A stretch of 64,000 nt of DNA, taken from assembly GCF_006345805.1 (NCBI RefSeq), contig NC_043000.1, positions 80,166,001-80,230,000 of the forward strand, read 5' to 3'. The DNA comes from Octopus sinensis. Lineage: Eukaryota. The position numbers were made by a program, and so were the translations under genes. Under the pieces are notes generated by a model, which ran no database searches, was not told the origin of the DNA, and worked only from the letters and a program-made list of their open reading frames with translations. This document shows, one piece after another, positions 1-61,310 of the stretch; position 1 is the first letter of the stretch, and the number at the start of each line of letters is the position of its first letter.

Positions 1-196
1 AGTCAATGGTTAATATATAAATCTAATAATAGGTCTCATAAAATAAGAATTTAGAGATATATTCCATCAGATAATTCTAAATATATTACCTTAACCATAT
101 AGGTTTCCTGGGGCATATAATATCAATCATAATAATGATTATTATGAAGTGGCATAGCATTACCTTTAATTCCTTTTTATTTATACAGCTTTACAT

Positions 197-282
197 AGAC
201 CTACACATGTTTCAACCGCATCAATTAGTAACAGTTGCAATTACAACCCTACTATAATATTGGTGCAGTTTCTTCAGGGCCT
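197..282 (-). ncRNA. Type I hammerhead ribozyme (minimal, PLE type)
   Basis: Minus strand: AGGCC-CTGAAGA-long stem II-GAAAC-ATGT-GTA^GGTCT. Mirror of 884-969 with pairing-compatible changes. Confidence 0.75.
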
Positions 283-883
283 TCACTTTAATATCCTTTG
301 ATTTAATTGTTTAAAGTTTTTCATTTATCAACTCTGCTTTAAATGATGCAGAGCTGTTTGTTAATTTAGACACAACTATCTTCAATACGAGTTTTGATTG
401 GATAATCACATATAGCCCATTATTTCAAAACACCTTGTTGTTTAAAGGTTTATTAAGTTCATTTAGAGATTCCAGTAAGTCTAAGTAAATTAATCTGGTC
501 AATTAAAGACAGAAACAAAGATTATACTATCAATTGGGAATTAATTAGTATTGCAAAACCATACAGATCTGGAACTAATAAATGTTACCTATGTTTAGAA
601 GGATTTTAACAAATTTTTACATCTAAGGGTAATATAATAAATTCTAGACAGGAACAAGCTTTAAGATACTTGCACTTAAAAAAATTCACCTTTGCTCCAT
701 ATAAATGAGTAATAAACATTTAAACAACATAACATTTTAAAATAACAGGCTATACGTGATTATCCAATGAAAACTTGAATCAAAGATAGTTTGCATCTAA
801 ATTAATGAACAACTCTACATAATACAGTGCAGAGTTGATAAATGGAAAACTTTAAACAGTTAAATCAAAGGATATTAAAGTGA

Positions 884-969: not shown

Positions 970-2946
970 ATGTAAAGCTGTATAAATAAAAAGGAATTAA
1001 AGGTAATGCTAATGCCACTTCGTAATAAACTTTATTATTATTATTGATATATATATATTTAGAGGAAGATAGTTATGACCAGTTCATAGGGTTACCCAGC
1101 ATTTTGCATCCATAAAGCGCTGAGGCTACTGGCCATTAGGGAGAGACATATATAACGCTAAGTGCTTTACGGATGCAAAGCCCTGGGTAACCCTATGAAT
1201 TTCTCTAAATACACTACTGCTCCATAACTAAGAGTGTGCTTCTCCTTCAAATTTATGATTAATTTATATATATATATATACAACGGTGTTTCGCTGGATG
1301 TTTGACCTAATTCTGATCTTTGTTTGTTGTGGTTTTCTGTCAATAAATAATAAATACTATAGGACCCAGTGCACTTATTTTCTCAGGAAGCAATAATACT
1401 GTTAAGAGTGTCCTCTGTGTGGGTATTGTATATGTACACACACACACACACACACACAAATGAACTTCTGAAAAGTATTAGTCAACAGAAGGCAACTGTA
1501 GAAGACATTTGTTTTACACCTAAGACACTGTGCAGTAGATTAGAATCTGGAATTATGTTATTGTGAAACAAACTACTTTACCACACAGCCAGACCTATGC
1601 ATCCATGAAAATTTCTAGTATATAATTCAGTTCATTACAACAAGCAGTACACCTACCATCACTTGCTATTTGTAACTTATATTTAGAACTCTAAATCATC
1701 GTCTCTATTCTTCATGACCAGTAATTGATTGCTTCTAGTAAACACACCATTTGCTAATCACAATATTAATTCATTGAGGATAATAACAAAATCAGACAGC
1801 TAGTCTCAAAGTAATAAAACAAACAGAACAGCAGCAATTACTTGAGCTATTAATGTTGATGCTTTTACAGCTTTTATTGGTGCAACAGGGATGTCAGCAG
1901 TTGAGATGAGTTAATAGCAGAGTGAGAAAAGCAAGGAAATCATTGGTGTGGTTTCATTGGTCACTAAGGAATTAATCCTTATTGACTTAACCAATCCACT
2001 TTCATAAGAGTATTTTGCTATAAAAACACTTGACTAAATCAATTATCTCAGGTATAAGCAGAATCAGAAACTTCATTGTAGGAAAGATTTGTTCTGATCA
2101 CTAAGTTGATAGAAATGGAGGACAAGGGGTATAAAATGGGTTTCTTCTTTTCATAGTGGTATTCAATGAAGACATACAAATACTTTTACTATATAATATC
2201 TCCTTATAATCCCCTGCCATTAGCAAATTTTTGTGGGACAAACTGGAGAAGTCATTTTACCTGCTGTTATATTGCAATATTGCTAAACGTTCAATTGATA
2301 AACAACCAAGAGATGTTCACTGAATGGACTGTGACAGCATTGGGATTGGAACTGCTGATTAAGAAATAAATGTTTTGAGTTCAAAATACAGCCTGAATAA
2401 ATATCTATATCATCTTCACCATTTTCCATATATTTTACTTCAATGATTTGAATAGACAATGTTTTAACTCATATGATTCTTCCTCACATGGTACATACAT
2501 CAATAAGAGTAGATCCTTAATTTTTATTGTTGTATGTTATGATTTTAATATGGGTATCTTTCTTATACCAACCTCTTTACATCTCAATACATTCTCCATC
2601 ATTAATATTTTAAAATGTTATATACATTACATATCCTTTTACACTGTAAAAGGATGTGTAATGTATATAAGAATATGTAATGTAACGACTAATGCATATA
2701 AGGTTATGTAATGTAATGACTAATAGTTGAAAATTATTTCATTTGAAAAACCTTAAGAAGTTTGCTTCCCAACCACATGATTCCAAGTTCCATTCCACTG
2801 TGTGGCACCTTGGGCAAGTGTCTTCTAAAGCCTCAGGCTGACCAAACCATTGTAAGTGGATTTGGTAGATGGAAACTGAATGAAACCTGTTGTGTGTGTG
2901 TGTGTATACATTATATACTACACACACACACACACACATACAAATA

Positions 2947-3350
2947 TTCTTTTACTTGTTTCAGTCATTTGACTGCAGCAATGCTGGAACACTGCCTTTA
3001 GTTGAACAAATCAACCCCAGGACATATTCTTTGTATGCCTAGTATTTATTCTATTGGTCTCTTTTGCCAAGCTGCTAAGTTACAGGGACGTAAACACACC
3101 AACATCGATTGTCAAGCAATGGTGGTGGGGACAAAGACAGACACACAAATATATATATACAACGAGCTTCTTTCAGTTTCTGTCATCCAAATCCACGCAC
3201 AAGGCTTTGGTTAGCTCAAGGCTATAGTAGAAGACACTTGCTGAAGGTTCCATACAGTGCCATGGTTCTAGGTTCCGAACCACATGGTTCTGGGTTCAGA
3301 ACCATGTGGTTGAGAAGTAAGCTTCTTACCACACAGCCACATCTGCACCT
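2947..3350 (-). mobile_element. tRNA-derived SINE family A (internal microsatellite), diverged copy
   Basis: Reverse-complement similarity to the young copy at 26593-27005. Confidence 0.8.
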
Positions 3351-3459
3351 ATGTATATAAATATATAATGTACTGTTCCATGATGGTAAAAACAACAAAA
3401 AAAGTACTCCATCTGGTGAGAGATAAATATTATTTAATAGACACAATATATGTTTTTAT

Positions 3460-3540
3460 GTGCTACTAATAGTTTATTGTGCTGAGAACATGCTAAATAA
3501 TGAATTATAACATGTGTAACATCACACAGTCATCAGGCAC
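3460..3540 (-). ncRNA. Hammerhead ribozyme copy with GAAA->TAAA (G12U), probably inactive
   Basis: Mirror of 3719-3799; reads CACAA-TAAAC-TATTA-GTA-GCAC. Confidence 0.6.
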
Positions 3541-3718
3541 AAACCACATAGTATAACAAACTAAAGATTGAATGAGAGAAGAAACACAAAAAGTTGAGAA
3601 GGAAGCATATAGAAAACATGGAAGGTTAAAAAGCAGAAAACATTTTCTTTCTGCTTCCTTCTCAAATTTTTGCGTTTCTTCTCTCATTCAATTTTTAGTA
3701 CATTATGCTATGTGGTTT

Positions 3719-3799
3719 GTGCCTGATGACTGTGTGATGTTACACATGTTATAATTCATCATTTGGCATGTTCTTAGCACAAGAAACTATTAGTAGCAC
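3719..3799 (+). ncRNA. Type I hammerhead ribozyme
   Basis: GTGC-CTGATGA-C-TGTG...CACA-A-GAAAC-TATTA-GTA^GCAC; stem I GTGC/GCAC. Confidence 0.75.
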
Positions 3800-4902
3800 A
3801 TAAAAACATGTATGGTGTCTATTAAATAATATACAAATATGTATGTGTGTGTGTGTTTGTCCCCCACTGCCACTTGACAACCGGTGTCAGTGTGTTTACA
3901 TCCCTACAACTAAGTGGTTTGGCAAAAAAGACTGATAGAATAAGTACTGGTGTCAATAAATTTGACTAAAATTCTGCAAGGTGGTGCCTCAGCATGGCCA
4001 CAGTCTAATGACTGAGACAAGTAAAAAGGTAAAAAATATATAAAGATACTTTAAAGAAATGTAAAACTTATGTTTCAATTAATTTTCAAGAATTTAGAGA
4101 AATTTAGCACATTAATTTTTGTCATTATTAGAAAAAGTTAATTTCATATTTCAGGGTGGTGGTTTGGTAGAAGTTTTAGAGTGTTGGACAAAATGCTTTG
4201 CAATATTTAGTTAAAGCACTTTAAGCTCCATGTTGACACCTGGGTCAACTTTGACTTTCATCCTTCTAAGGATAGTATAATGCTATAACAGATGTAACTC
4301 ACTTCCCTCATAACTGCTGGCATTGTGCCTAAATTAGAAATAAATTAAATTATTATTAATTTGGTGTTTGAAGCTTAAATCAACAAAGACTACTTACATA
4401 TTATAATGGAAGGTTTTAATTTAAACATGAATATCTAATGATAGGTTTTCATGCCAACATGCCTGATTTGAAAACAGTTAAACAGACCAGAAACATTTTT
4501 GATAATAGTTGTGAAGACAATGAAACTGGGGAAGAAGATAGACATTATAGCAGAGTCAAAGTAAGAAAAACAAGTGGTGAGGTTAGGTGCTATTCTTTGA
4601 CATTTGATGCCTCACACATGAAAACTATTGAAGATTTACACGAATGGCAACATGCCATGTTGCAGATATCTTCCATTTTTGTATGAGAGGACACATAATC
4701 ATCAAAATGAAGATAACAACAACGAGAAGGCTAATACTTAATGTGCTGGAAATAGCAGCCAAATCTCCTTTAAAGTCATCCCTTTTTAATTGGATATATT
4801 GAAAAAAAATGCAGTCCTATGACACATTGTTTGGAAAAGAAAAAAAATAAGTGGTCATGATTATGATGTCTTTGGATTAAAGAAGAGCATTAATAATAAT
4901 AG

Positions 4903-6700: not shown

Positions 6701-6783
6701 TATCCTGACGAGGAGGGTCATTGCCATGTTGCACTTTAGTGTAAATACATTCCGGTGGTGAGTTCCTGAAATGGTCATAGATA
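6701..6783 (+). ncRNA. Type I hammerhead ribozyme with extended stem II
   Basis: TATC-CTGACGA-GGAG..TCATTGCC/GGTGGTGA..TTCC-T-GAAA-T-GGTC-A-TA^GATA; stem I TATC/GATA. Confidence 0.75.
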
Positions 6784-15092: not shown

Positions 15093-16260
15093 GTGTGTTC
15101 TATACAGAGAACATCTGATTCTCATCTGGAGATAGAAATGATGTTTGGAGACAGCAGAAAGAGGACACTCACTTGGAAACTGATTACCCTAAAGCAGGAA
15201 CTAAAAGCTGTCAGTGAAAAACTCAGTCATCAGAAGAGAATAACGAAGAGAAGAACAATAAACAAAAAATTTAACTGCGACCAGGCAGCAGTATACAGAG
15301 ACATGAGGGGAGGGGTAATAAATATCATGGAAGCTCCTTCATGAGAAGACAGACTCCTTCTGGAGGAAAATCTGGAGTGAAGAGAAGGAATTTAACCAAG
15401 ATGCTCTGTGGCTGGAAGAAATCTGTAAAAGTTATTGCTCCTGCGTTACACCCAAGACATACAACATTGATGGTGAAACTCTTGCAAGTGTGATCCAGGA
15501 TGGAAAAGCACCTGGAAGAGACTTGATTGTTGGATATTGGTAGAAGAAGCTAACATTCTACTGACCATATCTTATCAATCTGTACCAGCAAGCTTTCATT
15601 GGAAACAGTAGCATACCACACTGGCTAGCTCTGGCAGAGATAAAATTGATCCCCAAATGCAGAACCACCCACATGGTAAAAAAACTACCAGCCAATTGCA
15701 TGTGGGAACTTTATGTTCAAACCTCTTCCTCCAAGACCATTGTGAAACCAATAACATTATCACAACAGAACAAGCAGCTGGGAAGAAGGGAGTCTGGAGA
15801 TGTGCTGCACAATTCCTAATCAACAAAACAGTGATGTCAGAGGTGTGGAAGTATAGGAGGAACCTAGTTTCAATGTGGCTAGATTACAAGAAAGCCTTTG
15901 ATTCTTTCCCACTCATGGATGCTAGAAGCCGTTCAACTTGTTAAAGGTCCAGTGAGAATAGTCAAAGCCATAGCTGACCTGACTTCATCGTGGGCCACCA
16001 TCTTGAAATCAAACACAATGAGTGACTGTATTATCACCGATAGAATACAATATTGCAAAGGCCTATTCCAAGGAAAACACCTCTCTGTGATGTTGATTAT
16101 ACTTTCTGTAAATCCCTTGTCATTCATGTTAGGAAGTCTGAAGGATATCTCACTGGTTCACAAGGAAACAGAAATACCAGAATTACACACTGATTCTTTG
16201 TGGATGACTTACAACTTTATGCAAAAAATATGCACAAGAGGAAAAAGAACCTTGATCTAG
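15093..16260 (+). pseudogene. R4/Dong-like (RLE-clade) non-LTR reverse transcriptase fragment, frameshifted
   Basis: EQAAGKKG...RRNLVSMWLDYKKAFDS, HSW, KGLFQGKHLS...NPLS, and a downstream FVDDL-like motif. Confidence 0.8.
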
Positions 16261-17852: not shown

Positions 17853-17886
17853 CCTATCTATATATCTATATATATATATATATATT

Positions 17887-18130
17887 GTTCAAAGAACACC
17901 TGGACAACTACATTGAAAGGAAGCCAAACTCCATCTTCTACCAACATGCTGTAGACTGCCACAAAGGATCCTTAGGGAAACTTAAGTTGAACATCCTATC
18001 AACACATCCCACCGATGCAATGTTGAGACAGGTCACAGAAGCTGTTTGTATACAAGAATACAAACCTACTCTCAACCGAAAATCTGAATGGAGTAACATC
18101 CAGATCCCATTCAGAAGGACTATTCTATAA
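17887..18130 (+). pseudogene. PLE GIY-YIG endonuclease C-terminal fragment
   Basis: LFKEHLDNY...FYQHAVDCHKG...ILSTHPTDAMLRQVTEAVCIQEYKPTLNRKSEW. Confidence 0.7.
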
Positions 18131-19019: not shown

Positions 19020-19865
19020 GGCTAAATTAAGACAGACACTGCTGGAAATTGAAAACAAAATTCAACTCTCTCATGAAATAGAAAGAGCAGAGAAGGTAAA
19101 GAGAGTTGTAGAAAGCATAAAAACAAACGTCATATCTTTCTATAAATTTGCAAAGGATACCGCAACAGTGCAGTACAAAATAGGACACCTGCTTCAATTA
19201 AATGGCACACTCACGGCAGACCCCAAAAGGATAAGTGAAGTGCTCAGTGTACAATTTAAAAGTGTCTTCACCTCTCCACTGGCTCACATGCAGATAAAAA
19301 AAACCCAGCTGATTTCTTTGATTATGCAATCCTGCAGTGTCCCTCAGGGAAATGTCTTAGAGCCATTACTGTTTATAGGAGCCCTCTTAGACATGCCCAC
19401 AGTCACTCAGACAGGCCCTGTCACTAGCTATGCCGATGATACAAAATTATCCCAGGCAATAAAGTATCCTAATGATGTCGTAAATCTGCAGAATGACCTA
19501 AATGCAATAGACAAGTGGGCAGAGCAAAACAATATGCAATTTACTGCTGAAAAATTTGAAGCATTGCACCATAAGATCACAAATGCTCCACAACTGACAT
19601 TTACAGGACCTGGAGGTACTGCTATGCCACTGCATAGTTCCGAAGGTACCGTATAATGCATCTAATATAAGAATCAGGTACTGCAATAGCCTAGGGTTCT
19701 TCAATGCTCTGCCAAAACAATTGAGAAACTTACATGATACAGATGTGAAAGTCTTCAAAAAGAAACTGGACACTCTTTTATCCACTATATCAGATGAACC
19801 AATAGCTTGACATGAGACTCAGTTGAGGGCAGCAGTGACAAATTCCCTCATACACCATACGTGCT
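19020..19865 (+). pseudogene. CR1/L2-like LINE ORF2 remnant, internally deleted
   Basis: SVPQGNVLEPLLF, YADDTK, LQNDLNAIDKWAEQNNMQF motifs. Confidence 0.85.
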
Positions 19866-21780: not shown

Positions 21781-21811
<31 letters not shown>

Positions 21812-21819
21812 GTTGTTGT

Positions 21820-22640
21820 TGCTGTTTGTAAGAAAGATGATAAAGCTCTCTTTCAGTCAGGTAAATGGGCCTGCTCAATATGTAGGAAAGGAGTTGGAAG
21901 AAATTCCATTCTCTGCACTCAGTATAAACTATGGACACATAAAAGGTGCAGTGGAATCCTAGGTAGATTAACAGATAAAGTCGTCTTCGTATGTGGCAGA
22001 TGTGCAGGAACAATAAGCACTAAGAGAACACGTGACTTACATTCTCTCAAATGTTCAGGAGGCTCTCATGAGCTTCTAGATAGTTTCTGTTATGTAGGTG
22101 ACCAAATTAGCAATGGAGGAGGATGTTCTGAAAGTATTGTTTCTAAAACAAGAATTGGTTGGAGGAAACTCAGAGAGATATTACCTCAGAATGAAAGGTA
22201 GACTATATGGTACTTATGTGCAAACGGCTTTACTCCATGGTAATGAGACATGAGCTCTGAATGCAGAAGACATGTATAAACTTGAGAGAAATGTAGGTAG
22301 TATGCTCTGCTGGATGTGCAACATCAGTGTTCATGTACAAGAAAGTGCAAATGTGTTGAGAGAAAAGTTGGGCATAAGAGGAATCAAATGTAACATGCAA
22401 GAGAGCAGATTATGTTGGTTTGGACATGTCATGTGTATGAATGAAGACAGCGGCATAAAGAAATGCCAACCATGGAAAGTAGATGGTACCTACAGAAGAG
22501 GGAGACCCAGGAAGACGTGGGATGAAGTGGTAAGGACCAATCTCAGGATGTTAAGCTTCATGGAGGAAATGACAATAGACCGAGATGTCTGGTGATATGA
22601 AGTTTTTGAGAAGACCTGCCCAAGTCAGTGAAACTGAGTT
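21820..22640 (+). pseudogene. RTE-clade LINE 3' fragment with Cys/His finger insertion
   Basis: [50 protein letters not shown] motifs. Confidence 0.85.
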
Positions 22641-24283: not shown

Positions 24284-24696
24284 TCATCCTCATCATCATC
24301 ATTAACCTCCATTGTCCATGCTAGCATGGGTTGGATTGTTTGACCAGGACTGGAAAGCTCAGAGGTTTCACCAGACTCCCGTCTGATTTGGCACGGCTTC
24401 TACAGCTGGATGCTCTTTCTAATGCCGATATATATATATATATAGAGTTTTGGCCAGCTAACCCATTGTGCATAATAAATTTGTACTCTATAAATGTATG
24501 TAGAGTAACCCATCAAAGTAATGTAAAATTGTTAAGTTCCTTTTATTATTACAGAACATAAACACAAATATCAATAAATAGATAAATAAATATTTATATA
24601 TATAAATACATACATATATATAACGATATATATATATATAGATATATATATATATATATATATATATATCTATATATATATATATATATATAATAT

Positions 24697-24820: not shown

Positions 24821-25185
24821 TATATATCATCATCCTAATCATCATCATTTAACCTCCATTGTCCATGCTAGCATGGGTTGGATTGTTTGACCAGGACTGG
24901 AAAGCTCAGAGGTTTCACCAGACTCCCGTCTGATTGGCACGGCTTCTACAGCTGGATGCTCTTTCTAATGCCGATATATATATATATATAGAGTTTTGGC
25001 CAGCTAACCCATTGTGCATAATAAATTTGTACTCTATAAATGTATGTAGAGTAACCATCAAAGTAATGTAAAATTGTTAAGTTCCTTTTATTATTACAGA
25101 ACATAAACACAAATATCAATAAATAGATAAATAAATATTTATATATATAAATAATACATATATATAACGATATATATATATATAT

Positions 25186-26575: not shown

Positions 26576-26592
26576 ATATATATATATATATA

Positions 26593-27005
26593 GGCGCAGG
26601 AGTGGCTGTGTGGTAAGTAGCTTGTTTACCAGCCACATGGTTCCGGGTTCAGTCCCACTGCGTGGCACCTTGGGCAAATGTTTTCTACTATAGCCTCGGG
26701 CCGACCAAAGCCTTGTGAGTGGATTTGGTAGACGGAAACTGAAAGAAGCCCGTCGTATATATGTATATATATATATGTGTATGTGCGTGTATGTTTGTGT
26801 GTCTGTGTTTGTTCCCCTAGCATTGCTTGACAACCGATGCTGGTGTGTTTATGTTCCCGTCACTTAGCGGTTCGGCAAAAGAGACCGATAGAATAAGTAC
26901 TGGACTTACAAAGAATAAGTCCTGGGATCGAGTTGCTCGATTAAAGGCGGTGCTCCAGCATGGCCACAGTCAAATGACTGAAACAAGTAAAAGAGTAAAA
27001 GAGTA
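26593..27005 (+). mobile_element. tRNA-derived SINE family A, young full-length copy
   Basis: GGCGCAGGAGTGGCTGTGTGG head, GGGTTCAGTCCC B-box, internal (TA/TG)n, (AAAAGAGT)n tail. Other copies at about 29683-30075(-), 34438-34660(+), 49710-50110(-), 54470-54790(+), 54945-55100(-) and 57097-57240(+). Confidence 0.9.
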
Positions 27006-27209
27006 ATATGTTAATAAAATAGAACATATGCATATATATAAACATATATGTACGTACCTACCTCTACATGTACATATACACGCATATATGTGTACAGGAC
27101 ACCAAAAAGACGTCGAACACATAGAGAGACGAAAAACATAGACACAAACCAAGGAACAGGACAAGCAAAAAAGAAAAAAAGAGATACAGGACAATAAGCA
27201 CAACGAAAA

Positions 27210-27273
27210 ATCCCCTTCTTCAGTCGCTAAGGTTTCATCTACTCTACGTTTCGAAGGATAAAAGCGAGACGTA
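27210..27273 (-). ncRNA. Non-circularly permuted (pseudoknotted) hammerhead ribozyme candidate
   Basis: Minus strand: TACG-TC^TCGCT-TTT-ATCCTTC-GAAA-CGTA-16 nt-AGCGA-CTGAAGA-AGGGGAT; all three helices pair. Confidence 0.7.
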
Positions 27274-28081
27274 TACTTTGAAGAAACTTCCTTCCTGCGA
27301 AAAGCAAATCAATTAAAATTCTGAGATCTTTTCGCAGAGGGGTAAAAAATGGTAAAAAAAGCAAGACGGTAACGACAGTACAAACATATAAACAGTAAAA
27401 AAAAAAATTTATATAAACAGTTGAAAAATAAATATATAACAGTGAGAGACAGGACAAGGAGAACAAGATAAGAAGGGCTGTTTACGCCAGACGAAAAAAG
27501 TAATGCAAACGCTGGATTATAGTGGACGACGAGAGAGAAAGAATGTCGACCAGTGGCCTTAGAAGGCAGGCGAGAAAAGACAGGATAGCAGTTACGACGG
27601 AAGTATCGTCGCAGATGGACGACGGGAATGGGGGAGGAGGAGCAAGAGGAAGAGAAAGATGAAGGGGAATGGTGTGAGGAGACCATGAAGAATGGTGAGG
27701 GGGAGAGAGAGAAAGAAGAATGAGAGAGAGAGGAAGAGACAAGTTAAGTGAGGGAAAAAGGACGAAAAAGGGAATGGGAGAGAAAGAAAGAAAGATGCGA
27801 GTCGCGTGAGAGTTAATATCAAGGCTAACTTGATAAACAGAACAATCTTACTAATAGTGTGCGTGCGTTTAGTCGTATAATGTTAATAAAATAGAACATA
27901 TGCATATATATAAACATATATGTACGTACCTACCTCTACATGTACATATACACGCATATATGTGTACAGGACACCAAAAAGACGTCGAACACATAGAGAG
28001 ACGAAAAACATAGACACAAACCAAGGAACAGGACAAGCAAAAAAGAAAAAAAGAGATACAGGACAATAAGCACAACGAAAA

Positions 28082-28144
28082 ATCCCCTTCTTCATCGCTA
28101 AGGTTTCATCTACTCTACGTTTCGAAGGATAAAAGCGAGACGTA
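28082..28144 (-). ncRNA. Second copy of the rearranged hammerhead, lacking C3
   Basis: Identical except AGCGA-TGAAGA (one base missing). Confidence 0.55.
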
Positions 28145-28400
28145 TACTTCGAAGAAACTTCCTTCCTGCGAAAAGCAAATCAATTAAAATTCTGAGATCT
28201 TTTCGCAGAGGGGTAAAAAATGGTAAAAAAAGCAAGACGGTAACGACAGTACAAACATATAAACAGTAAAAAAAAATTATATATAAACAGTTGAAAAATA
28301 AATATATAACAGTGAGAGACAGGACAAGGAGAACAAGATAAGAAGGGCTGTTTACGCCAGACGAAAAAAGTAATGCAAACGCTGGATTATAGTGGACGAC

Positions 28401-28433
<33 letters not shown>

Positions 28434-30329
28434 TGTGTGTATATCTGCATATGTATATGTGTGTGCATATTGTCATGCACATGCACACACTCATACACAG
28501 AGACACAATCACACTAAATGTCTAGAAAGGCTTGGAATATGAAATTACAGTTGAGGCAGGTACAATTATGGAAGGGTTAATATATTTAAAATATATATTT
28601 ACCAGATAATTATATAGTTAAGTTTCTTATAACCAGATTTTGGAAGTATAAAGAAAGAGGGAGAGAGACAGACAGATGTATAGACAGAAAAATAGAGAGT
28701 GAGAAAGAAAGAGAGAGAGAGACAAACAAACACAAAGAGGGAGAGAGAAAAGGAGAAACATCACATATTTTCTAGCTCTATAATAATGTTATCCTTACAA
28801 AACAATGTATAGAAAGGTTGGGAGATATATGCCATGGCACCGCCAATATTTAGCAGAATCAGTAAATAAAAAGAAGGCAAGCAAAAAATAAATAAAAATG
28901 TTTCTCTACTGCAGAAAGAAACAAAAAAGAAAAAGGAACATTTTTCAGAAGTGAATTATCTAAAGTAAAAGTTTAAAAAAAATAAAAATATATAAATAAA
29001 ATGACAACATAAAAACATCACTGAAACAAAAAAAATTCCAGATCAATCAATGTGTGGAAACAGTTGTAAATCTTCCAAATTAAATTACATATTGTAGAGA
29101 GTGGTGGAATGAAGTCCACCCCAACCACCATCTCCTTCAGCTATGTTCTGTCAATAAACCATTTGTCTGTCGATGTCAACAATAATCTGTGAAACACAGA
29201 TACTAACACATACATGGGATAATGCTGTAATTACATTCCCACATCTTCTGAATGAGGAGGTGGGACTGGGGTAGAGGCTGGGGACAAATTTCTTTAGAGT
29301 TGGTTCCTATATTTGCAACTGCAACATTGCAGGCTTCTCTTACTCTCCCTCTTGTTCCATGAGTTTTGGATTTCTTTCTGTTTGCTTCACAGGCATTCAA
29401 ACATATAGATGTCTGAACTAAACATCAGCTACATTAATCTCAGCAAGCTACTAGAAGGACAGTAACTATTTTGAGTACTAGCCCTGATTCTTTTGAATAC
29501 TATCCCTATTTATAACTGTCTGTACAATGATTTCATCTTTTGCATCCTTTCCAGATAACCGGTCTATCATGGTTTGTATGTATATGTATATGTGTGTGAA
29601 TGTGGCAGCATATATACCCCATCACTACCTGCCATACATACATAAATACATACATACATACATACATTCATATATATTCTTTCATTCTTTTACTTGTTTC
29701 AGTCATTTGACTGTAGCCATGCTGGAGCACTGCCTTTAAGGGTATCTTTTTAGTTGAAGAAATCAACCTCAGGGCTTATTCTTTGTAAGCCTAGTACTTA
29801 TTCTACCAGTCTCTGTTGCTGAACTGCTAAGTTACAGGGATGTAAGCACACCAACATCGATCGTCAAGTGATGGTGAGGGTACAAACACACACACACACA
29901 CACACACAAATATACATGACGTGCTTCTTTCAGCTTACATCTACCAAATTCACTCACAAGGCTTTGGTCAGCCTGAAGCTATAGTAGAAGACACTTGTCC
30001 ATGGTGCCATGTAGAGGAATTGAACCTGGAACCATGCAGTGTGGAAGCAAGCTTCTTGCCACACAGCCATGTGCCTATGTAAATGCATATACTTTACTTT
30101 GTATATTTTTTTTATTTGTTTTGCAAAATTTTTGATGTGAATTCATGTTTTGAAGTAAAACTTCCTGTATCTAGTGAGGGTCACTATACCAATAAAAATT
30201 AAGATAAATTCACACGCTGGCTCATTATCACTTCTTCATTTTACCAACTAACCAACCAATGGTTTGTTTAATATGTTGACTGAATAATCCTTTGGTTGTT
30301 AGTTTTCTCTGTCAGTTTCATCAATGAGG

Positions 30330-34659: not shown

Positions 34660-35120
34660 ATGGCCGTTTGCCAGCTCTGTCTGGCCCCGTGTCGGTGGCA
34701 CTTAAAAGCACCATCCGTTCGTGTCCGTTGCCAGCCTTGCCTGGCCCCCGTGCCAGTGACACGTAAAAGCACCGTCCGTTCATGGCCGTTTGCCAGCTCT
34801 GTCTGGCCCCGTGTCAGTGGCACATAAAAGCACCATCCGTTCGTGTCCGTTGCCAGCATCGCCTGGCCCCGTGCCGGTGACACGTAAAAGCACCATCCGT
34901 TCGTGGCCGTTTGCCAGCTCTGTCTGGCACCTGTGCAGGTGGCACGTAAAAAATACCCACTACACTCATGGAGTGGTTGGTGTTAGGAAGGGCATCCAGC
35001 CGTAGAAACACTGCCAGATCTGACTGGGCCTGACAAAGCCTTCCAGCTTCACAGACCCCAGTTGAATCATCCAACCCATGCTAGCATGGAAAGCGGATGC
35101 TAAATGATGATGATGATGAT
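34660..35120 (+). mobile_element. SINE family C with internal 60-62-bp tandem repeats
   Basis: Five units in alternating order A-B-A-B-A, then the conserved body and a (GAT)n tail. Confidence 0.85.

Positions 35121-35489: not shown

Positions 35490-35494
<5 letters not shown>
35222..35494. repeat. Diverged inverted repeat (35222-35346 / 35375-35494)
   Basis: Arms are reverse-complementary (e.g. GATCACAAAAAGTACAAAATAATGAATA / TATTCATTATTTTGTACTTTTTGTGATC). Confidence 0.8.
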
Positions 35495-35525
<31 letters not shown>

Positions 35526-35527
<2 letters not shown>

Positions 35528-35932
35528 TTTTCTTTTTCTCTCTTTTTACTTGTTTCAGTCATTTTGACTGTGGCCATACTGGAGTACCGCCTTTAGTCGA
35601 GCAAATCGACCCCGGGACTTATTCTTTGTAAGCCCAGTACTTATTCTATCGGTCCCTTTTGCCGAACCGCTAAGTGACGGAGACATAAACACACCAGCAT
35701 CGGTTGTCAAGCAATGCTAGGGGGACAAACACACACACAAACATACACGCACATACATATATATACATATATACAACGGGCTTCTTTCAGTTTCTGTCTA
35801 CCAAATCCACTCACAAGGCTTTGGTCGGCCCGAGACTATAGTAGAAGACACTTGCCCAAGGTGCCACGCAGTGGGACTGAACCCGGAACCATGTGGTTGG
35901 TAAACAAGCTACTTACCACATGGCCACTCCTG
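35526..35932 (-). mobile_element. SINE family A, young full-length copy
   Basis: High reverse-complement identity to 26593-27005. Confidence 0.9.
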
Positions 35933-35972
<40 letters not shown>

Positions 35973-37245: not shown

Positions 37246-37442
37246 ATATATATATATATATATATTATATAAAAGGGCTTAGTAAAATAAATTACTTTGC
37301 CGCATACTGAACTCGTTAGAAATAGCAGCTAAAAAAACTATTTCTAACACTTAAAGAAAACCTCTCTCATATAGTGTTTGTTCAATTCAACTCAAGAAAG
37401 TATGAGGGTAGAGACATTAAAAAATCAAATGCAAAGGTTATT

Positions 37443-37493
37443 TGAGTACGTACGTTCAAGATTAGCCAAAATCGACCTTCTCTCATCAGCTCA
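37443..37493 (-). ncRNA. Hammerhead copy missing one A of GAAA
   Basis: Reads GAAC-GTACGTA; otherwise as 38384-38436 apart from minor stem II differences. Confidence 0.55.
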
Positions 37494-37992
37494 GAATGCC
37501 CTTGTTTGAATTTGAAAACACTGAAAATGGGAGCATACCCTTTCGGCTTGTTATCGCTTCTGAAGATCTGTTCCAAACTAACAGTGCCAACAAACTCAAA
37601 TATGCAAGACAAAAATTTCTGCTCTCCCCTTTCCACCAGCGTGGGTTAAAATCAGCAAACACTATGCTTTTTTCGGTAAAATCCGAGACAATTAAGTAGA
37701 GAGAGATGAATTATAATTTCAACAATTGAGGGTAAAATTAATTAATTAATTAATCAATTTCACCAAGTATTCAGTATACAAAGGGACCATTTAAGGCAAA
37801 TTCAAATTATTACATTATATAAAAGGGCTTAGTAAAATAAATTACTTTGCTGCATACTGAACTCGTTAGAAATAGCAGCTAAAAAAACTATTTCTAACAC
37901 TTAAAGAAAACCTCTCTCATATAGTGTTTGTTCAATTCAACTCAAGAAAGTATGAGGGTAGAGACATTAAAAAATCAAATGCAAAGGTTATT

Positions 37993-38045
37993 TGAGTACG
38001 TACGTTTCAAGATTAGCCAAAATCGACCCTTCTCTCATCAGCTCA
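37993..38045 (-). ncRNA. Type I hammerhead, intact
   Basis: TGAG-CTGATGA-GAGA..TCTT-GAAA-CGTACG-TA^CTCA. Confidence 0.8.
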
Positions 38046-38383
38046 GAATGCCCTTTTATATAATGTAATAATTTGAATTTGCCTTAAATGGTCCCTTTGT
38101 ATACTGAATACTTGGTGAAATTGATTAATTAATTAATTAATTTTACCCTCAATTGTTGAAATTATAATTCATCTCTCTCTACTTAATTGTCTCGGATTTT
38201 ACCGAAAAAAGCATAGTGTTTGCTGATTTTAACCCACGCTGGTGGAAAGGGGAGAGCAGAAATTTTTGTCTTGCATATTGAGTTTGTTGGCACTGTTAGT
38301 TTGGAACAGATCTTCAGAAGCGATAACAAGCCGAAAGGGTATGCTCCCATTTTCAGTGTTTTCAAATTCAAACAAGGGCATTC

Positions 38384-38436
38384 TGAGCTGATGAGAGAAG
38401 GGTCAATTTTGGCTAATCTTGAAACGTACGTACTCA
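38384..38436 (+). ncRNA. Type I hammerhead, intact
   Basis: TGAG-CTGATGA-GAGA-AGG-GTCAA-TT-TTGGC-TAA-TCTT-GAAA-C-GTAC-G-TA^CTCA; perfect palindrome ACGTACGT. Confidence 0.85.
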
Positions 38437-38709
38437 AATAACCTTTGCATTTGATTTTTTAATGTCTCTACCCTCATACTTTCTTGAGTTGAATTGAACA
38501 AACACTATATGAGAGAGGTTTTCTTTAAGTGTTAGAAATAGTTTTTTTAGCTGCTATTTCTAACGAGTTCAGTATGCGGCAAAGTAATTTATTTTACTAA
38601 GCCCTTTTATATAATGTAATAATTTGAATTTGCCTTAAATGGTCCCTTTGTATACTGAATACTTGGTGAAATTGATTAATTAATTAATTAATTTTACCCT
38701 CAATTGTTG

Positions 38710-38783
<74 letters not shown>

Positions 38784-40468: not shown

Positions 40469-40523
40469 GTGCCTGATGAATATGTTTGAGATAATTTTCA
40501 ACATAGGAAACTATTAGTAGCAC
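40469..40523 (+). ncRNA. Type I hammerhead, intact (same family as 3719-3799)
   Basis: GTGC-CTGATGA-A-TATGTT...AACATA-G-GAAAC-TATTA-GTA^GCAC. Confidence 0.8.
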
Positions 40524-48300: not shown

Positions 48301-50568
48301 ATTTTATATATATATATATATATGGACTGCAGTCATGCTGAGGCACTGCCTTGAAGGGCCTAGTTGAACAAATCTACCCTTGTACTTACGTTACTTACGT
48401 TTGTTCTTTTACGTATGGCATGCAGTGACTGGATGCCTCCAACTGATAATTTCCAGAACAATGAAATCATGTGATAGGGACGTTCTGGTGCCCATGACAA
48501 ACAATTATCATTTGCTACAATCTGTGTGTGCTTTTATGCACCAAGTGCCTATATGAGAGGATCTCTCAAGGCTAATAGTGCAGTATTAGCAAGATATTCA
48601 TGTTAAGTTGGGTAAACACACACACACACACGCACACTCACACGCACATGCATGAACACACACACACACACATGACAAACTTCTCTCAGCTTCTGTCAAC
48701 CAAATTCGCTCACAAAGTTTTGGTCAGTCTGAAGTTACAATAGAAGATAGCTGCCTAAGTTTCTATACTGTGGGACTGAACATGAAATAACATGATTATG
48801 AAGTGAACTTCTTAATCACACAGCCATGCTTGTACCTATTTATATATATATATATATATATATACTCAACATATGTTAGTAAAATACACTAACCTCAAAC
48901 ACCACACCCACATATGTAACTAATTTCTAATTCAAATACCTCCTTTATAAACTCTAATATATTCATGACATCTTCAGCTGATTAAGGTATCATCATGGTT
49001 TCAATACCTGACACAATACCATTTCATTTGATGGTATTACCTGTCTAAAAATAGTTTCAACACTGCTTGAAAATGCACAAACAGAATTGTTAAATGAAAC
49101 AAAATGAAAATATTAAAAGTTAGAAAGCATATAAAAGATAAATATGAAGCATGTGTAAAGGAAAGATATAATACATGTAAGATATATAAATCCATATATA
49201 TCTGGATCAAAATCTCAGAACTCACCTAGAAACTACTGAGCCCCAGAACACTATAGCACATTAGCTATGCATAGGAAGAAAAGTCAGAAAATATGGTTGT
49301 AACAAAAATAGAGGCAACAAAAAGGGAGGAAGACACAACCTACAAGCTGAAGTGATGAATGCAAAAAAGAAAAAGACATTTCTTAAGAACCAAAGATAAT
49401 AAGGGTAAAACAAGAGTGATAGAAGGTAGTAGAATCCAAGTCAATAATAAGATATCATATCTACAGTGTGGAGAAGTTGCACTTTTCCATGCTTGTATGA
49501 GTTGGACGGAATTTGTTATTTTCTATGACAATGATTTTCTATACCTTTCATTTTGTCAACCATCACCTATTTCCAAGTAAAGTAATATTTGCTTGGCCAG
49601 ACATTTTTCCACAGAGGATTGGGAATGAAGGATTGAACATGCATGACAGTGATACTCATTTACAACTCTTCTAAGGCAAGGAGACACCAACTCACACACA
49701 AACGCATTCTTTATTCTTTTACTTTTTTTCTAATCATTTGACTGCAGCCATGCTGGAGTACCATCTTAAAGGGTTCTTTAGTTAAAGAAATCGACCCCAG
49801 GACTTATTCTTTGTAAGCCTAGTACTTATTCTATTGATCTGTTTTGTTGAACCTTTAAATTACAGGGACATAAACACATCAACATCTATTGACAGGCTAT
49901 GGTGGGAGACAAATACAGACACAAAGACACATTCACATAAATAGATGCATATATATATATGATAGGCTTCTTTCAGTTTCCATCTACCAAATCCACTCAC
50001 AAGGCTTTGGTCAACCCAAGGCTATAGAAGAAGATACTTGCCTGAGGTGTTGTGTAGTGGGACTGAACCCAGAACATGTGGTTGAGAAACGAGCTTCTTA
50101 CCACACAACTATTCCTGCTGCTATATATACAAACAATGTGCTTATTTCAGCTTTTCCTCCCAAATGTACTTACATCTAACCAATCTCTCCACCCTAAAGA
50201 CAGAGTCTGAATTTACAGTAAGGCTTATATGCATACACTACTGGTTGCATATCTTTAACTTTTTGCACACTCCATCTGCCAACTTTACAGCTATTATATA
50301 ATTCTGAACCCTCAAAAACAGCTGTTGGATCTGAAATATCATGCCCTCTCTCCTTAGTTTTCCGTATCTTTTCTATTCCATGTAAATCTCTTCTGCAAAT
50401 ATATGAATATATACCTATATACTTATACATGAATGCTCATCTGAATCGCGCCAAAATGAAGACATTTGAAAAATACCCCCAAATATAATTTGCAGAACTT
50501 TGTACATACTCTCTTTCGGGTGAGTGTTGTGTGTATAGTTCTGGAAATTGTGTTCTGTAAGTGACAGA

Positions 50569-59310: not shown

Positions 59311-61310
59311 CACTGAACAGCAAAAAGAAACACGAGACATGTGTGACTGTGAAATATGTTTTAATTTCATGTCAGAGATAAATTTTGATAAATCTGATAA
59401 AGTCAATTTCTTGAATGCACTTTAACCACAGTTTATGGGTTGTTGCCATGTGTTCTGGTAGTGGGTGGATCCAGCACATCGAGACTGAAGGGCGTAACAT
59501 GTTCAATACTGTGTATACCCTCCCTGGGTGTTTGAAACAGCCATACACTATCGGTATACGGAGTGCATGAGGCAGTTTGCAAAAACCATTGACACTTGTG
59601 CCCACACCCTGAGGAAAGCTGCCTCCAGTTCCTCATGAGTTGTTAACCTTGGTATCACCTGGCTCAGCCATCTCTGGATTTCATCCTGCAGATGTTCAGT
59701 TGGGTTTAAATCTGGGCTGAGAGCCAGTCATGGCATGGTTCTGATGTTGTGCTGATGCAGGAAGTCCATGGTGATCCTGGACATGTGGGAGGGAGAATTG
59801 TCCTGCTGAAACATGTGGCTATCATCATCATCGTTCGACCATGGTCGAGACAATGGAATTTACCATGCTACGCCAGACTTCACGGTCCATCATGGCATTA
59901 CGGAGGTCCTGTTGCTGGATGCCTGTATCCCTGGAGATTACATCAGGGTAGGAGAGTGTGCGCCCTCTGGTATTGCGAGTAGATGGCTTCCAGAGGAGAA
60001 GAGTAGAAATTGTCTCGTTTTCAGCTCTACAACAATGTCCAGCAAACTGGACTCTCCTACCTTTCACAAGAGATGACACAGGTGGTAGTTTCCCATATAT
60101 TTGCATTTTGGTTGGATGACACTTCCACGAGAGATTTTGAGCTCCCATAAGGAGGCGAGTGTAGGTTCCATCCAACTGCCTCTCAAGCTTCTTTGATAAC
60201 GTCCAGGTTTCTGAGCCATATAGTAGAATTGGTTCGACTGTGGCTTTGAAGATTTCAAGTTTGAAGTCTCTACTTAGATTTGATGTGGCTATGGTGATGC
60301 ACAAGGAAGGGCATGATGTGAGGTCTTAGGATCTGGTCAATGTAGCACTGCACTGTGATGCCATTCCCTTTGCCTGCACCAATATTTTGGAACACATGGG
60401 ACCCAATTCTCTGATTCAGGCCTATATCACCCCAAACCATGATGCTTTGACCACCCCATGTGTCTCTCTCCATGACACATGCATCTCTGTAGTGTTCACC
60501 CCTCCTATGCCACACCCTAATTCTGCCTGCATCTGAGGTGGAAATGCAGTACTGGCTCTCGTCAGATCTGCATTGTTGATGCTGCCAATATCGGTGCTGT
60601 GTAGCCCACTGAAGTTGGGCCTGATAGTGGTGGGTGATGAGGACAGGCCTTTGAGCAGAACAATGGCAATGCAGGTTGCTAGTGGCTGGGCAACGTTGTA
60701 CTGTGTCGTTGCTGATGAGTTGCTGTCCAGTGCCTATGGTCTTGCAAGCTGTCACACTGGCTGGTCTGAAGTGATCATGGAGGTGTTGCAGGTGGATAAA
60801 GTGGTCCTACCTGGGCATGGTCACCCAGAGGGGCCCTCTGCGGGCATGGTCTGCAGTGCTGTTGGTATTGTTGTAGCACTGTTGCAAGCAATAGGTGGTG
60901 CTGATATGGACATTGTATGCTTTTGCAACAACCAGGGCACACTGCTCTGCTTGCAATCAGCCAATAGCTTGTTCTCTCTGCATTGTTGACAATTGGTTAA
61001 TACCTGAAGCATCCAAATTATGTATGCTAGGAACATGGTTCAAGTTGATTTTTATACTCATAACCTCCGTGAGATGCATGTGCATGTTGGTTTCTATGAC
61101 AATTGTTTGTGACTACCACCTACGGCATTCAACACAGCTGTATTTTGGTGTCTCAATTCAAATAAATTTTAAAGGTTACCTGCAATTTGGGTCTCGTCCA
61201 TAAACCAGCATGTCTTAGAATATTTATACTTACATACTTGAAATAACTTTTCAGAATTTACCATATAAAAATGACATTTGAAAATATTGCGTTTCTTTTG
61301 CAATTCAGAA
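59311..61310 (-). mobile_element. Full-length degenerate Tc1-like transposon interrupted by an RTE fragment
   Basis: TA-flanked imperfect TIRs; motifs SDES..GRIRVW, GGQSIMVWG, FQQDN...SPDLNPTEH. Confidence 0.9.
59823..60282 (-). mobile_element. 5'-truncated RTE LINE insertion
   Basis: PILLYGSETWTL...RRVQFAGH...DREVWR, a (TGA)n tail, and the 10-bp TSD ATGTGGCTAT (59813-59822 / 60283-60292). Confidence 0.9.

What the first reader, a model, noticed from the sequence alone, without database searches (positions are those of the whole stretch)
27210..27273. Hammerhead ribozyme with non-circularly permuted strand order (pseudoknotted topology)
Seen: the minus strand reads TACG-TC^TCGCT-TTT-ATCCTTC-GAAA-CGTA-(16 nt)-AGCGA-CTGAAGA-AGGGGAT. 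Helix I TCGCT/AGCGA (5 of 5) and helix III CGTA/TACG (4 of 4, plus the A15.1-U16.1 pair) are perfect. Helix II AGGGGAT/ATCCTTC pairs 6 of 7. The core and GUC triplet are canonical. Known: types I, II and III are circular permutations of the order [UH]-[CUGANGA]-[GAAA]; here the order is [UH]-[GAAA]-[CUGANGA], which no circular permutation gives. Inference: the 3-nt linker joins the distal ends of helices I and II, which lie side by side in the active fold, so it could replace the loop I-loop II contact, while the 16-nt linker spans back from helix III. Alternatively the GAAA strand could come from the next tandem monomer. I recall that rearranged hammerheads have been reported, so novelty of this family must be checked.
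Basis: partly seen in the sequence, partly recalled or inferred. Interest (0 to 1): 0.92.

Follow-up and report, generated by a model that had tools for sequence, protein, structure and literature searches.

The report
Rearranged (type-SGC) hammerhead ribozyme candidate
The minus strand really does carry every part of a hammerhead self-cleaving RNA in the scrambled order site-GAAA-CUGANGA, but this "type-SGC" arrangement was published and tested in 2023, so the possible news is only that an animal genome encodes one, which remains unproven because no second family member could be found.

Summary
Minus strand 27273→27210 reads UACG-UC^UCGCU-UUU-AUCCUUC-GAAA-CGUA-(16 nt)-AGCGA-CUGAAGA-AGGGGAU. 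The hammerhead core and three helices are all present, in block order Site–GAAA–CUGANGA. A matching descriptor finds only this site in the window, none in 300 shuffles and none in 860 Mb of random sequence. That is about 3.5e-5 expected per window, but roughly one per 2.5-Gb genome.

The topology is not new. It is the "type-SGC" hammerhead of Eckert et al. (NAR 2023), validated by cleavage and compensatory mutations. Those authors found it only in metatranscriptomes and metagenomes, never in the genome of a known organism.

The motif lies in a 535-bp segment repeated 872 bp upstream, a partial tandem of 1.6 units starting at a (CT)n microsatellite. The upstream copy has lost core base C3. The window is animal DNA. 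It also holds seven canonical minimal type-I hammerhead motifs inside similar tandem or inverted composites, as in Penelope-like elements and retrozymes.

Weak points:
- Stem II has an A·C mismatch next to the core plus two G·U pairs.
- The extra "fourth helix" is no better than chance.
- No homologue was found, so there is no covariation.

Best reading (p≈0.6): a genuine genome-encoded type-SGC hammerhead in a retrozyme-like repeat. Main rival: a chance match (≈0.3).

The parts
27270..27273 (-). Helix III, 5' strand (UACG; G16.2 at 27270)
   Evidence: pairs 4/4 with CGUA at 27245-27248
27268..27269 (-). U16.1-C17 of the GUC cleavage triplet; predicted scissile bond between 27268 and 27267
   Evidence: by analogy with the mapped cleavage sites of SGC-1/2/3 (PMC10085705)
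27263..27267 (-). Helix I, 5' strand (UCGCU)
   Evidence: 5/5 Watson-Crick with AGCGA at 27224-27228; duplex -5.2 kcal/mol
27260..27262 (-). UUU linker joining the distal ends of helices I and II. It is 3 nt in the 7-position register and 6 nt (27257-27262) in the register with one extra base after the core.
   Evidence: the published type-SGC linker is 'typically three nucleotides'
27253..27259 (-). Helix II, 3' strand (AUCCUUC; C11.1 at 27253)
   Evidence: pairs with AGGGGAU as A.C, G.U, G.U, G-C, G-C, A-U, U-A
27249..27252 (-). Core GAAA (G12 A13 A14 A15.1)
27245..27248 (-). Helix III, 3' strand (CGUA)
27229..27244 (-). 16-nt connector between block G and block C. It contains GAUGAAA (27233-27239), which can pair with the 3' tail.
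   Evidence: the 7-bp pairing occurs in 17-35% of shuffles, so it is not evidence on its own
27224..27228 (-). Helix I, 3' strand (AGCGA)
27217..27223 (-). Core CUGAAGA (C3-A9)
   Evidence: C3 (27223) is the base deleted in the upstream copy
27210..27216 (-). Helix II, 5' strand (AGGGGAU). The first A may be an extra unpaired base, like the extra U in the validated SGC-1 and SGC-3.
27202..27208 (-). 3' tail UUUCGUU, the candidate partner of GAUGAAA. This sits where the published fourth helix links the distal ends of stems I and II.
   Evidence: present but not above chance
28082..28145 (-). Second copy of the motif, identical except that C3 of CUGAAGA is deleted (AGCGA-UGAAGA). Predicted inactive.
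27008..27542 (-). Repeat A1 (535 bp), carrying the intact motif 202 nt from its 3' end
   Evidence: six differences from A2
27543..27879 (-). Segment B (337 bp), C/U-rich on the minus strand. B plus A1 make one full 872-nt unit.
   Evidence: no other copy in the window
27880..28412 (-). Repeat A2, the 5'-truncated upstream partial unit (a pseudo-LTR-like arrangement)
28401..28433 (.). (GA)n/(CT)n microsatellite at the upstream edge of the partial tandem
26590..27007 (+). tRNA-derived SINE copy abutting the downstream end of A1. It is context, not part of the ribozyme.

Best explanation
This is a DNA-encoded member of the already described type-SGC class of hammerhead ribozymes, sitting in a short non-coding retroelement-like repeat of an animal genome.

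Proposed mechanism (inferred, not shown). Transcription of the minus strand first makes block S (UACG-UC|UCGCU) and block G (AUCCUUC-GAAA-CGUA). These close helix III into a hairpin with a 22-nt loop. When block C (AGCGA-CUGAAGA-AGGGGAU) emerges about 16 nt later, its two arms pair with the two halves of that loop to form helices I and II. This creates a doubly pseudoknotted fold whose core is the ordinary hammerhead three-way junction. The short U-rich linker ties the distal ends of helices I and II together on one side. A connector/tail pairing may do so on the other side, replacing the loop-loop contact. The 2'-OH of C17 (27268) then attacks its 3' phosphate. The result is a 2',3'-cyclic phosphate end and a 5'-OH fragment starting at U27267.

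Genomic context. The motif lies in an 872-nt unit present as a partial tandem: a truncated copy followed by a full copy. This is the arrangement typical of Penelope-like elements and non-LTR retrozymes. There, two active copies would release a unit-length RNA that can be circularised. Here the upstream copy has lost C3, so today at most one cut per transcript is expected.

Shown versus inferred. Shown: the sequence features, their statistical rarity, the repeat architecture, and the fit to the published class. Inferred: folding, cleavage, transcription, and the retroelement life cycle.
For: 1. All 13 core positions and helices I-III are present in S-G-C order.
2. It is the only hit in the window, with 0/300 shuffles and 0 hits in 860 Mb of random sequence.
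3. It fits the experimentally validated type-SGC architecture. It has a 5-bp stem I and a 3-nt I-to-II linker, and its connector length is within the published 0-44 nt. It also has an extra base after CUGANGA, as in SGC-1 and SGC-3 rebuilt from their primers.
4. Its helix energies are in the range of the validated examples.
5. It lies in a 1.6-unit partial tandem of 872 nt that starts at a microsatellite. Only about 4-6% of this window lies in comparable local direct duplications.
6. The same window holds 7 canonical minimal type-I hammerhead motifs, against about 0.005-0.015 expected per order. They sit in tandem or inverted composites flanked by (TA)n. This matches the published picture of Penelope-like elements and animal retrozymes, so the host genome demonstrably propagates hammerhead-bearing repeats.
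7. Those canonical copies also often lack a Watson-Crick 10.1-11.1 pair, so the A.C here is not unusual locally.
Against: - No second, independent copy was found, so there is no covariation. The window holds none. Scans of viral, metagenome and prokaryote contig collections found none. ORF-based routes also failed.
- Eckert et al. treated descriptor hits without covariation as probable false positives, and reported no such RNA in genomes of known organisms.
- Stem II has an A.C mismatch next to the core and two G.U pairs. A competing GAAGG/CCUUC register would sequester G8 and A9.
- The fourth helix is not above chance.
- The only other copy carries a core deletion, and six differences in 535 bp give no sign of selection.
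- There is no Rfam hit.
- The 872-nt unit is pyrimidine-rich and not rod-like.
- About one chance match of this quality is expected per large genome.
Confidence: 0.58

Rival explanations
1. It is a chance match. In a large, repeat-rich, AT-rich animal genome a 64-nt stretch happens to satisfy the type-SGC descriptor. The local 872-bp duplication is an unrelated segmental duplication. Nothing is cleaved in vivo.
For: - The analytic rate of about 0.28 per Gb of strand gives about 1-2 matches per 2.5-Gb genome.
- No homologues and no covariation were found.
- Stem II is imperfect and the fourth helix is not significant.
- The second copy has a core deletion.
- The authors of the class expected and discarded such hits.
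- Thirteen partial matches to a 23-base HRIMA-1 pattern turned up in metagenomes with no real ribozyme among them.
Against: - The per-window expectation is about 3.5e-5.
- The motif sits exactly in the kind of partial-tandem, microsatellite-bounded repeat that carries the canonical hammerheads of this same window.
- It shares fine details with validated examples: the 5-bp stem I, the short linker and the extra base after the core.
Confidence: 0.3
2. It descends from a hammerhead but does not function. Either it is a decayed member of a once-active type-SGC family, or it is a by-product of the tandem, inverted and truncated rearrangements typical of Penelope-like insertions. In both cases the core is still recognisable but the RNA no longer cleaves at a useful rate.
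For: - The A.C at 10.1/11.1 and the weak stem II.
- The sister copy has already lost C3.
- Dead copies with core indels also occur among the canonical motifs, e.g. 37495-37440, where GAAA has become GAA.
Against: - All invariant core bases and helices I and III are perfect in copy 1.
- The stems differ from those of every canonical hammerhead family in the window. The three blocks are also packed into 64 nt with short linkers, which is hard to obtain by shuffling pieces of type-I units.
Confidence: 0.12

Closest known systems
Type-SGC hammerhead ribozymes (HRIMA-1 motif and 'type-SGC variants'; Eckert, Friedrich, Weinberg & Weinberg, Nucleic Acids Res 2023, PMC10085705)
   Same: The block order Site-GAAA-CUGANGA is identical and all core nucleotides are present. 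It has a 5-bp stem I and a short (about 3 nt) linker from stem I straight into stem II. A connector of 0-44 nt precedes block C. A possible helix links that connector to the 3' tail. One extra base follows CUGANGA, as in SGC-1 and SGC-3.
   Different: - Stem I is UCGCU/AGCGA, not the invariant AUGUU/AACAU of HRIMA-1, so it is not an HRIMA-1 member.
- Stem II is weaker.
- It is encoded in animal chromosomal DNA inside a tandem repeat. The published 583 sequences come almost only from metatranscriptomes, probably from circular RNA replicons with hairpin ribozymes. None came from the genome of a known organism.
- It has no covariation or cleavage data.
Minimal type-I hammerheads of Penelope-like elements and animal non-LTR retrozymes (Cervera & de la Pena 2014; Lunse et al. 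2017, recalled from memory; Craig et al. 2021, PMC8557442; Li et al. 2026 bioRxiv)
   Same: The genomic setting matches: a non-coding unit in partial head-to-tail tandem forming a pseudo-LTR, with its edge at a microsatellite. The ribozyme lies in the repeated part, a few hundred nt from the 3' end. Canonical examples lie in the same window.
   Different: Those ribozymes have the canonical C-G-S order, often with a near-zero helix III loop, and act as dimers. Here the order is S-G-C with an intramolecular 4-bp helix III. The 872-nt unit shows no sequence similarity to the canonical elements.
Type-CSG and type-GCS hammerheads (same 2023 paper)
   Same: They are also non-circular permutations with two pseudoknots in the core. 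They are the other two reading frames of a tandem S-G-C array.
   Different: The block order differs. CSG is known from two metagenomic DNA sequences and GCS from a single bacterial locus without covariation.

Membership tests
Type-SGC hammerhead ribozyme (structural class) | Blocks in 5'-3' order S (site), G (GAAA), C (CUGAnGA), each uninterrupted | tested here: met
   The six-order scan assigns SGC.
Type-SGC hammerhead ribozyme (structural class) | All conserved core nucleotides: C3 U4 G5 A6 N7 G8 A9, G12 A13 A14, the A15.1-U16.1 pair, and H17 not G | tested here: met
   CUGAAGA, GAAA and GUC. In copy 2, C3 is deleted.
Type-SGC hammerhead ribozyme (structural class) | Stems I and III base-paired | tested here: met
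   Stem I is 5/5 and stem III is 4/4 Watson-Crick.
Type-SGC hammerhead ribozyme (structural class) | Stem II base-paired up to the core | tested here: inconclusive
   One register gives A.C followed by 6 bp, two of them G.U. The other, with one extra A as in SGC-1/3, gives only 4 bp (G-C, G.U, G.U, G-C). A competing 5-bp register exists.
Type-SGC hammerhead ribozyme (structural class) | Short linker (typically 3 nt) from stem I directly into stem II | tested here: met
   UUU in the 7-position register, or 6 nt in the alternative register.
Type-SGC hammerhead ribozyme (structural class) | Fourth helix between the G-to-C connector and the 3' tail | tested here: inconclusive
   GAUGAAA/UUUCGUU (7 bp, two G.U) is present and appears in the MFE fold. 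However, 17-35% of shuffled connector/tail pairs do as well.
Type-SGC hammerhead ribozyme (structural class) | Covariation in the stems among homologues (the criterion the authors used to accept candidates) | not testable with these tools
   No homologue was retrievable. The only other copy is a 98.9% identical local duplicate.
Type-SGC hammerhead ribozyme (structural class) | Site-specific self-cleavage after H17, abolished by mutating the conserved G in the first part of CUGAnGA | not testable with these tools
   This is a bench experiment.
HRIMA-1 motif (the original type-SGC family) | Invariant stem I sequence, and occurrence in metatranscriptome contigs associated with hairpin ribozymes | tested here: not met
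   Stem I here is UCGCU/AGCGA, against AUGUU/AACAU in SGC-1. The locus is chromosomal animal DNA, with no Rfam ribozyme on either strand.
Non-LTR retrozyme / non-autonomous Penelope-like element | Head-to-tail tandem units, each carrying a hammerhead | tested here: inconclusive
   There are 1.6 units of 872 nt with two motif copies, one of which lacks C3.
Non-LTR retrozyme / non-autonomous Penelope-like element | The ribozyme is a type-I hammerhead | tested here: not met
   The order is S-G-C.
Non-LTR retrozyme / non-autonomous Penelope-like element | Dispersed multi-copy family, circular RNA products, and similarity to an autonomous element's pseudo-LTR | not testable with these tools
   The window holds no other copy.

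The most novel reading that the evidence does not exclude
The motif is the active ribozyme of a previously unrecognised family of Penelope-like or retrozyme-type non-autonomous retroelements in an invertebrate genome (I suspect a mollusc or cephalopod). It would be the first type-SGC hammerhead encoded in the DNA of a known organism. This would mean the non-circular permutation arose, or was captured, within genomic retroelements as well as RNA replicons. It could also explain reports that some 'hammerhead-less' Penelope-like clades carry the two core halves in non-canonical arrangements (the 'HHR_half_core' cases in Craig et al. 2021).
Probability: 0.2. Interest if true: 0.75.

Novelty: new member of a known kind. 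Interest (0 to 1): 0.45.

Why it matters
The pseudoknotted, non-circularly permuted hammerhead is established (2023). It has only been seen in environmental RNA and DNA of unknown hosts. A confirmed copy in an identified animal genome, inside a tandem retroelement, would give the class a tractable host. It would link the class to the Penelope-like element and retrozyme world. It would also offer a natural system for asking how such permutations evolve and whether they support RNA circularisation. If the motif is a chance match instead, it is a useful warning. Single-locus descriptor hits for small ribozymes occur about once per large genome and need covariation or cleavage data.

Tried and rejected
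- **Rfam 15.** Nothing at gathering thresholds over the whole window, and no hammerhead at E<=10 around the site. Nothing at the canonical motifs either.
- **Exact or gapped pattern scans for relatives of this motif.** Viral contigs, metagenome contigs and genome contigs each gave 0 hits.
- **Fetching the published family as a comparison set.** The HRIMA-1 pattern gave 13 metagenome loci, all partial chance matches without the stems. The SGC-1 and SGC-3 patterns gave 0 in viral contigs. The alignments in the paper's supplement are images and are not held as text.
- **ORF-based routes to other copies.** The exact look-up of the 125-aa ORF failed. So did its homology search and an exhaustive HMMER search with the 75-aa ORF that overlaps the motif.
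- **Organism identification.** Exact look-ups of two reverse-transcriptase-like ORFs failed. The homology search gave 257 unnamed ENA metagenome proteins. One 14-kb contig lacked the window's SINE.
- **LTR-retrozyme reading.** Rejected: no TG..CA ends, primer-binding site, polypurine tract or target-site duplication.
- **Viroid-like rod.** Rejected: the unit is 68% pyrimidine and mostly unpaired.
- **Fourth helix as supporting evidence.** Rejected after shuffling.
- **GIY-YIG remnant at about 17870-18130.** Not confirmed by Pfam.
- **GAAA supplied by the next monomer.** Rejected by combinatorics.

Full report
**1. The observation.**

- Helix I (UCGCU/AGCGA) is five Watson-Crick pairs.
- Helix III (UACG/CGUA) is four, plus A15.1-U16.1.
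- The core CUGAAGA, GAAA and the GUC triplet are canonical.
- Helix II is 6 of 7 as stated, with three qualifications. The unpaired position is the core-proximal 10.1/11.1 pair (A.C). Two of the six pairs are G.U. A perfectly complementary alternative register, GAAGG/CCUUC, would tie up G8 and A9.

**2. Is it more than chance?**

I wrote an S-G-C descriptor: U-H, stem I >=5, linker 0-8, stem II >=6/7, GAAA, stem III >=4, connector <=50, CUGANGA, with G.U allowed.
- It finds only this site on either strand of the window.
- It finds none in 300 dinucleotide-preserving shuffles.
- It finds none in 860 Mb of first-order Markov sequence with the window's composition.
- An analytic product of the component frequencies gives about 0.28 matches per Gb of strand.

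That is about 3.5e-5 per window. It is also about one or two per 2.5-Gb genome. The motif is therefore very unlikely to arise by chance in a given window, but a single chance instance somewhere in a large genome is not unlikely.

A scan of all six block orders at the same stringency returns only this site, in order SGC.

**3. What the topology is.**

The order is not a circular permutation of the canonical C-G-S, and the three helices cross each other. This is exactly the 'type SGC' hammerhead of Eckert, Friedrich, Weinberg and Weinberg (Nucleic Acids Res 2023, PMC10085705).
- They defined blocks S, G and C and the six possible orders.
- They found 583 type-SGC sequences: 407 HRIMA-1 and 176 'variants'.
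- They mapped cleavage to the predicted site, and abolished it with a mutation of the conserved G in CUGAnGA.

Their description fits this locus in detail. Stem I is five pairs. [quoted passage not shown] The connector before block C can be 0-44 nt (16 here).

I rebuilt SGC-1 and SGC-3 from the primer sequences in the supplement. Both have one extra nucleotide between CUGAUGA and a 5-bp stem II. In that same register the window motif has an extra A followed by G-C, G.U, G.U, G-C. Its helix energies fall within the range of the two validated ribozymes.

The published fourth helix joins the connector to the 3' tail. Here GAUGAAA (27239-27233) can pair with UUUCGUU (27208-27202), and the MFE fold contains this pairing. 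However, 35% of shuffled connector/tail pairs give at least 7 bp, or 17% when the position is restricted. I therefore give it no weight.

A tandem of S-G-C reads only as SGC, GCS or CSG.

**4. Surroundings.**

The window is animal-type DNA. It has AT and TATG microsatellites, many copies of a tRNA-derived SINE, reverse-transcriptase fragments, a weak sub-threshold match to a Tc3-type transposase HTH domain, and no long ORFs. From memory the SINE resembles an octopus SINE. I could not verify this.

The motif lies in a 535-bp segment, A1 (27008-27542). This segment is repeated at 27880-28412 (A2) with six differences. A 337-bp segment B separates the two.

Read on the minus strand the order is A2-B-A1. 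That is a 5'-truncated partial unit followed by one full 872-nt unit. The array begins at a (CT)n microsatellite and ends against a SINE.

The upstream motif copy (28145-28082) is identical except that C3 is deleted, which should inactivate it.

There are no LTR hallmarks. The unit RNA is 68% pyrimidine and not rod-like. Neither A nor B has another copy in the window.

**5. An unexpected piece of context.**

I relaxed the six-order scan to stem I >=4, stem II >=5/7 and stem III >=3. Seven canonical type-I (C-G-S) hammerhead motifs then appear: +885-968, -281-198, +3719-3799, +6701-6783, -38045-37993, +38384-38436 and +40469-40523. In 400 shuffled windows each order gave 2-6 hits, which is 0.005-0.015 per window.
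- Several have a helix III with a zero- or one-nucleotide loop, for example GAAA-CGU|ACG-UA. This is the style of the dimeric Penelope-like-element hammerheads (the comparison is from my own knowledge of Lunse et al. 2017).
- They sit in composites of partial tandem and inverted copies flanked by (TA)n. One example is 37261-38718, with a 551-nt unit at 99% identity, including a dead copy whose GAAA has become GAA.

This is the published architecture of Penelope-like elements: partial tandems forming pseudo-LTRs, adjacent inverted truncated copies, insertion into microsatellites, and hammerheads in the pseudo-LTR (PMC8557442). It is also the architecture of animal non-LTR retrozymes, recently argued to be their non-autonomous derivatives (bioRxiv 10.64898/2026.07.22.740005).

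Several of these canonical copies also lack a Watson-Crick 10.1-11.1 pair. Rfam misses all of them.

So the host genome clearly propagates hammerhead-bearing repeats. The SGC motif sits in a repeat of the same general design. Only about 4-6% of the window lies in comparable local direct duplications.

**6. Search for relatives.**

Every route open to me failed.
- Pattern scans of viral, metagenome and prokaryotic contig collections found nothing.
- Exact and homology searches with ORFs that overlap the unit found nothing.
- The published family itself is not in the collections I could scan.

So covariation, the criterion Eckert et al. required before accepting any descriptor hit, cannot be assessed. 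They also state that no such RNA was found in genomes of known organisms apart from one type-GCS locus. A literature search found no later report of a type-SGC hammerhead in a eukaryotic genome.

**7. Most likely mechanism (inferred).**
1. Blocks S and G fold first into the helix III hairpin.
2. Block C, transcribed about 16 nt later, pairs with both halves of the 22-nt loop to make helices I and II around the normal hammerhead core.
3. The short linker holds the distal ends of I and II together.
4. C17 (27268) is cleaved, giving a 2',3'-cyclic phosphate and a 5'-OH at U27267.

In an array with two active copies, an 872-nt RNA would be released and could be circularised, as for retrozymes. With C3 missing upstream, only one cut is expected now.

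**8. Weighing.**

For a genuine ribozyme:
- the complete core and helices;
- the low per-window chance;
- the fine agreement with validated type-SGC examples;
- the retrozyme-like partial tandem;
- a hammerhead-rich genomic neighbourhood.

Against:
- a single locus with no covariation;
- a weak stem II with a competing register;
- a dead sister copy;
- no expression data;
- a whole-genome chance expectation near one.

I put a genuine type-SGC hammerhead (active or recently active) at about 0.6, a chance match at about 0.3, and inactive hammerhead-derived debris at about 0.1.

**9. Novelty.**

If real, this is a new member of a known kind in a new setting: the first in the DNA of a known organism, inside a tandem retroelement. 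Interest is moderate. It is decided by a genome-wide search for copies with covariation and by a simple in vitro cleavage assay.

Noticed in passing
window +885-968, -281-198, +3719-3799, +6701-6783, -38045-37993, +38384-38436, +40469-40523: Seven canonical type-I (C-G-S) hammerhead-like motifs, against about 0.005-0.015 expected per order per window. Several have a 0-1-nt helix III loop (e.g. GAAA CGU|ACG UA), the style of dimeric Penelope-like-element hammerheads. Rfam 15 does not detect them. Several lack a Watson-Crick 10.1-11.1 pair.
   Followed up: partly
window 37261-38718: A composite of a 551-nt unit in partial tandem plus inverted orientation at about 99% identity, flanked by (TA)n on both sides. 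It carries three hammerhead copies, one of them dead (37495-37440: GAAA has become GAA and one G is lost in stem II). The architecture resembles a Penelope-like or non-LTR-retrozyme insertion.
   Followed up: partly
window 115-465 / 702-1056 and 3427-3832: Inverted repeats at about 88% identity, each carrying type-I hammerhead motifs. The pair 885/281 shows a C-to-U change at position 11.1 (A.C versus A-U) and a U-A versus U.G change in stem II.
   Followed up: no
window 26590-27007 and at least 10 other sites (e.g. 35491-35953, 29669-30117, 49710-50129, 2945-3366): An abundant tRNA-derived SINE of about 420 bp, with an internal TATG/TG microsatellite and an AAGAGTAAA-like tail. From memory it resembles an octopus SINE, but the organism was not verified.
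   Followed up: partly
window 34660-34951 and 63017-63361: The same GC-rich 61-63-bp satellite (…GGCACGTAAAAGCACCATCCG…TGGCCGTTTGCCAGC…) in opposite orientations, about 5 copies each. It creates spurious 175-178-aa ORFs at 62867-63419.
   Followed up: no
window 24302-24510 and 24849-25056: A 100% identical direct duplication of about 209 bp, 547 bp apart, embedded in long (AT)n/(TATG)n microsatellites.
   Followed up: no
window 27024-27096 (and its copy at 27896-27968): A TATG-microsatellite palindrome inside repeat A gives weak sub-threshold Rfam hits to mir-3149, mir-297 and mir-466 (32.8 bits against a gathering score of 100). This looks like a low-complexity artefact.
   Followed up: no
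window 15500-16260, 19168-19656, 59828-60304, 60270-60755, 21800-22201: Degenerate retroelement and transposon coding fragments. 19168-19656 matches RVT_1 (Pfam). I read 15500-16260 as reverse-transcriptase-like from its motifs only, because Pfam gave no RVT hit for it. There are also a weak Tc3-type transposase HTH match and a weak PHD-finger match. The 59828-60304 ORF has 257 relatives in ENA metagenome assemblies. A suspected GIY-YIG remnant at about 17870-18130 was not confirmed by Pfam.
   Followed up: partly
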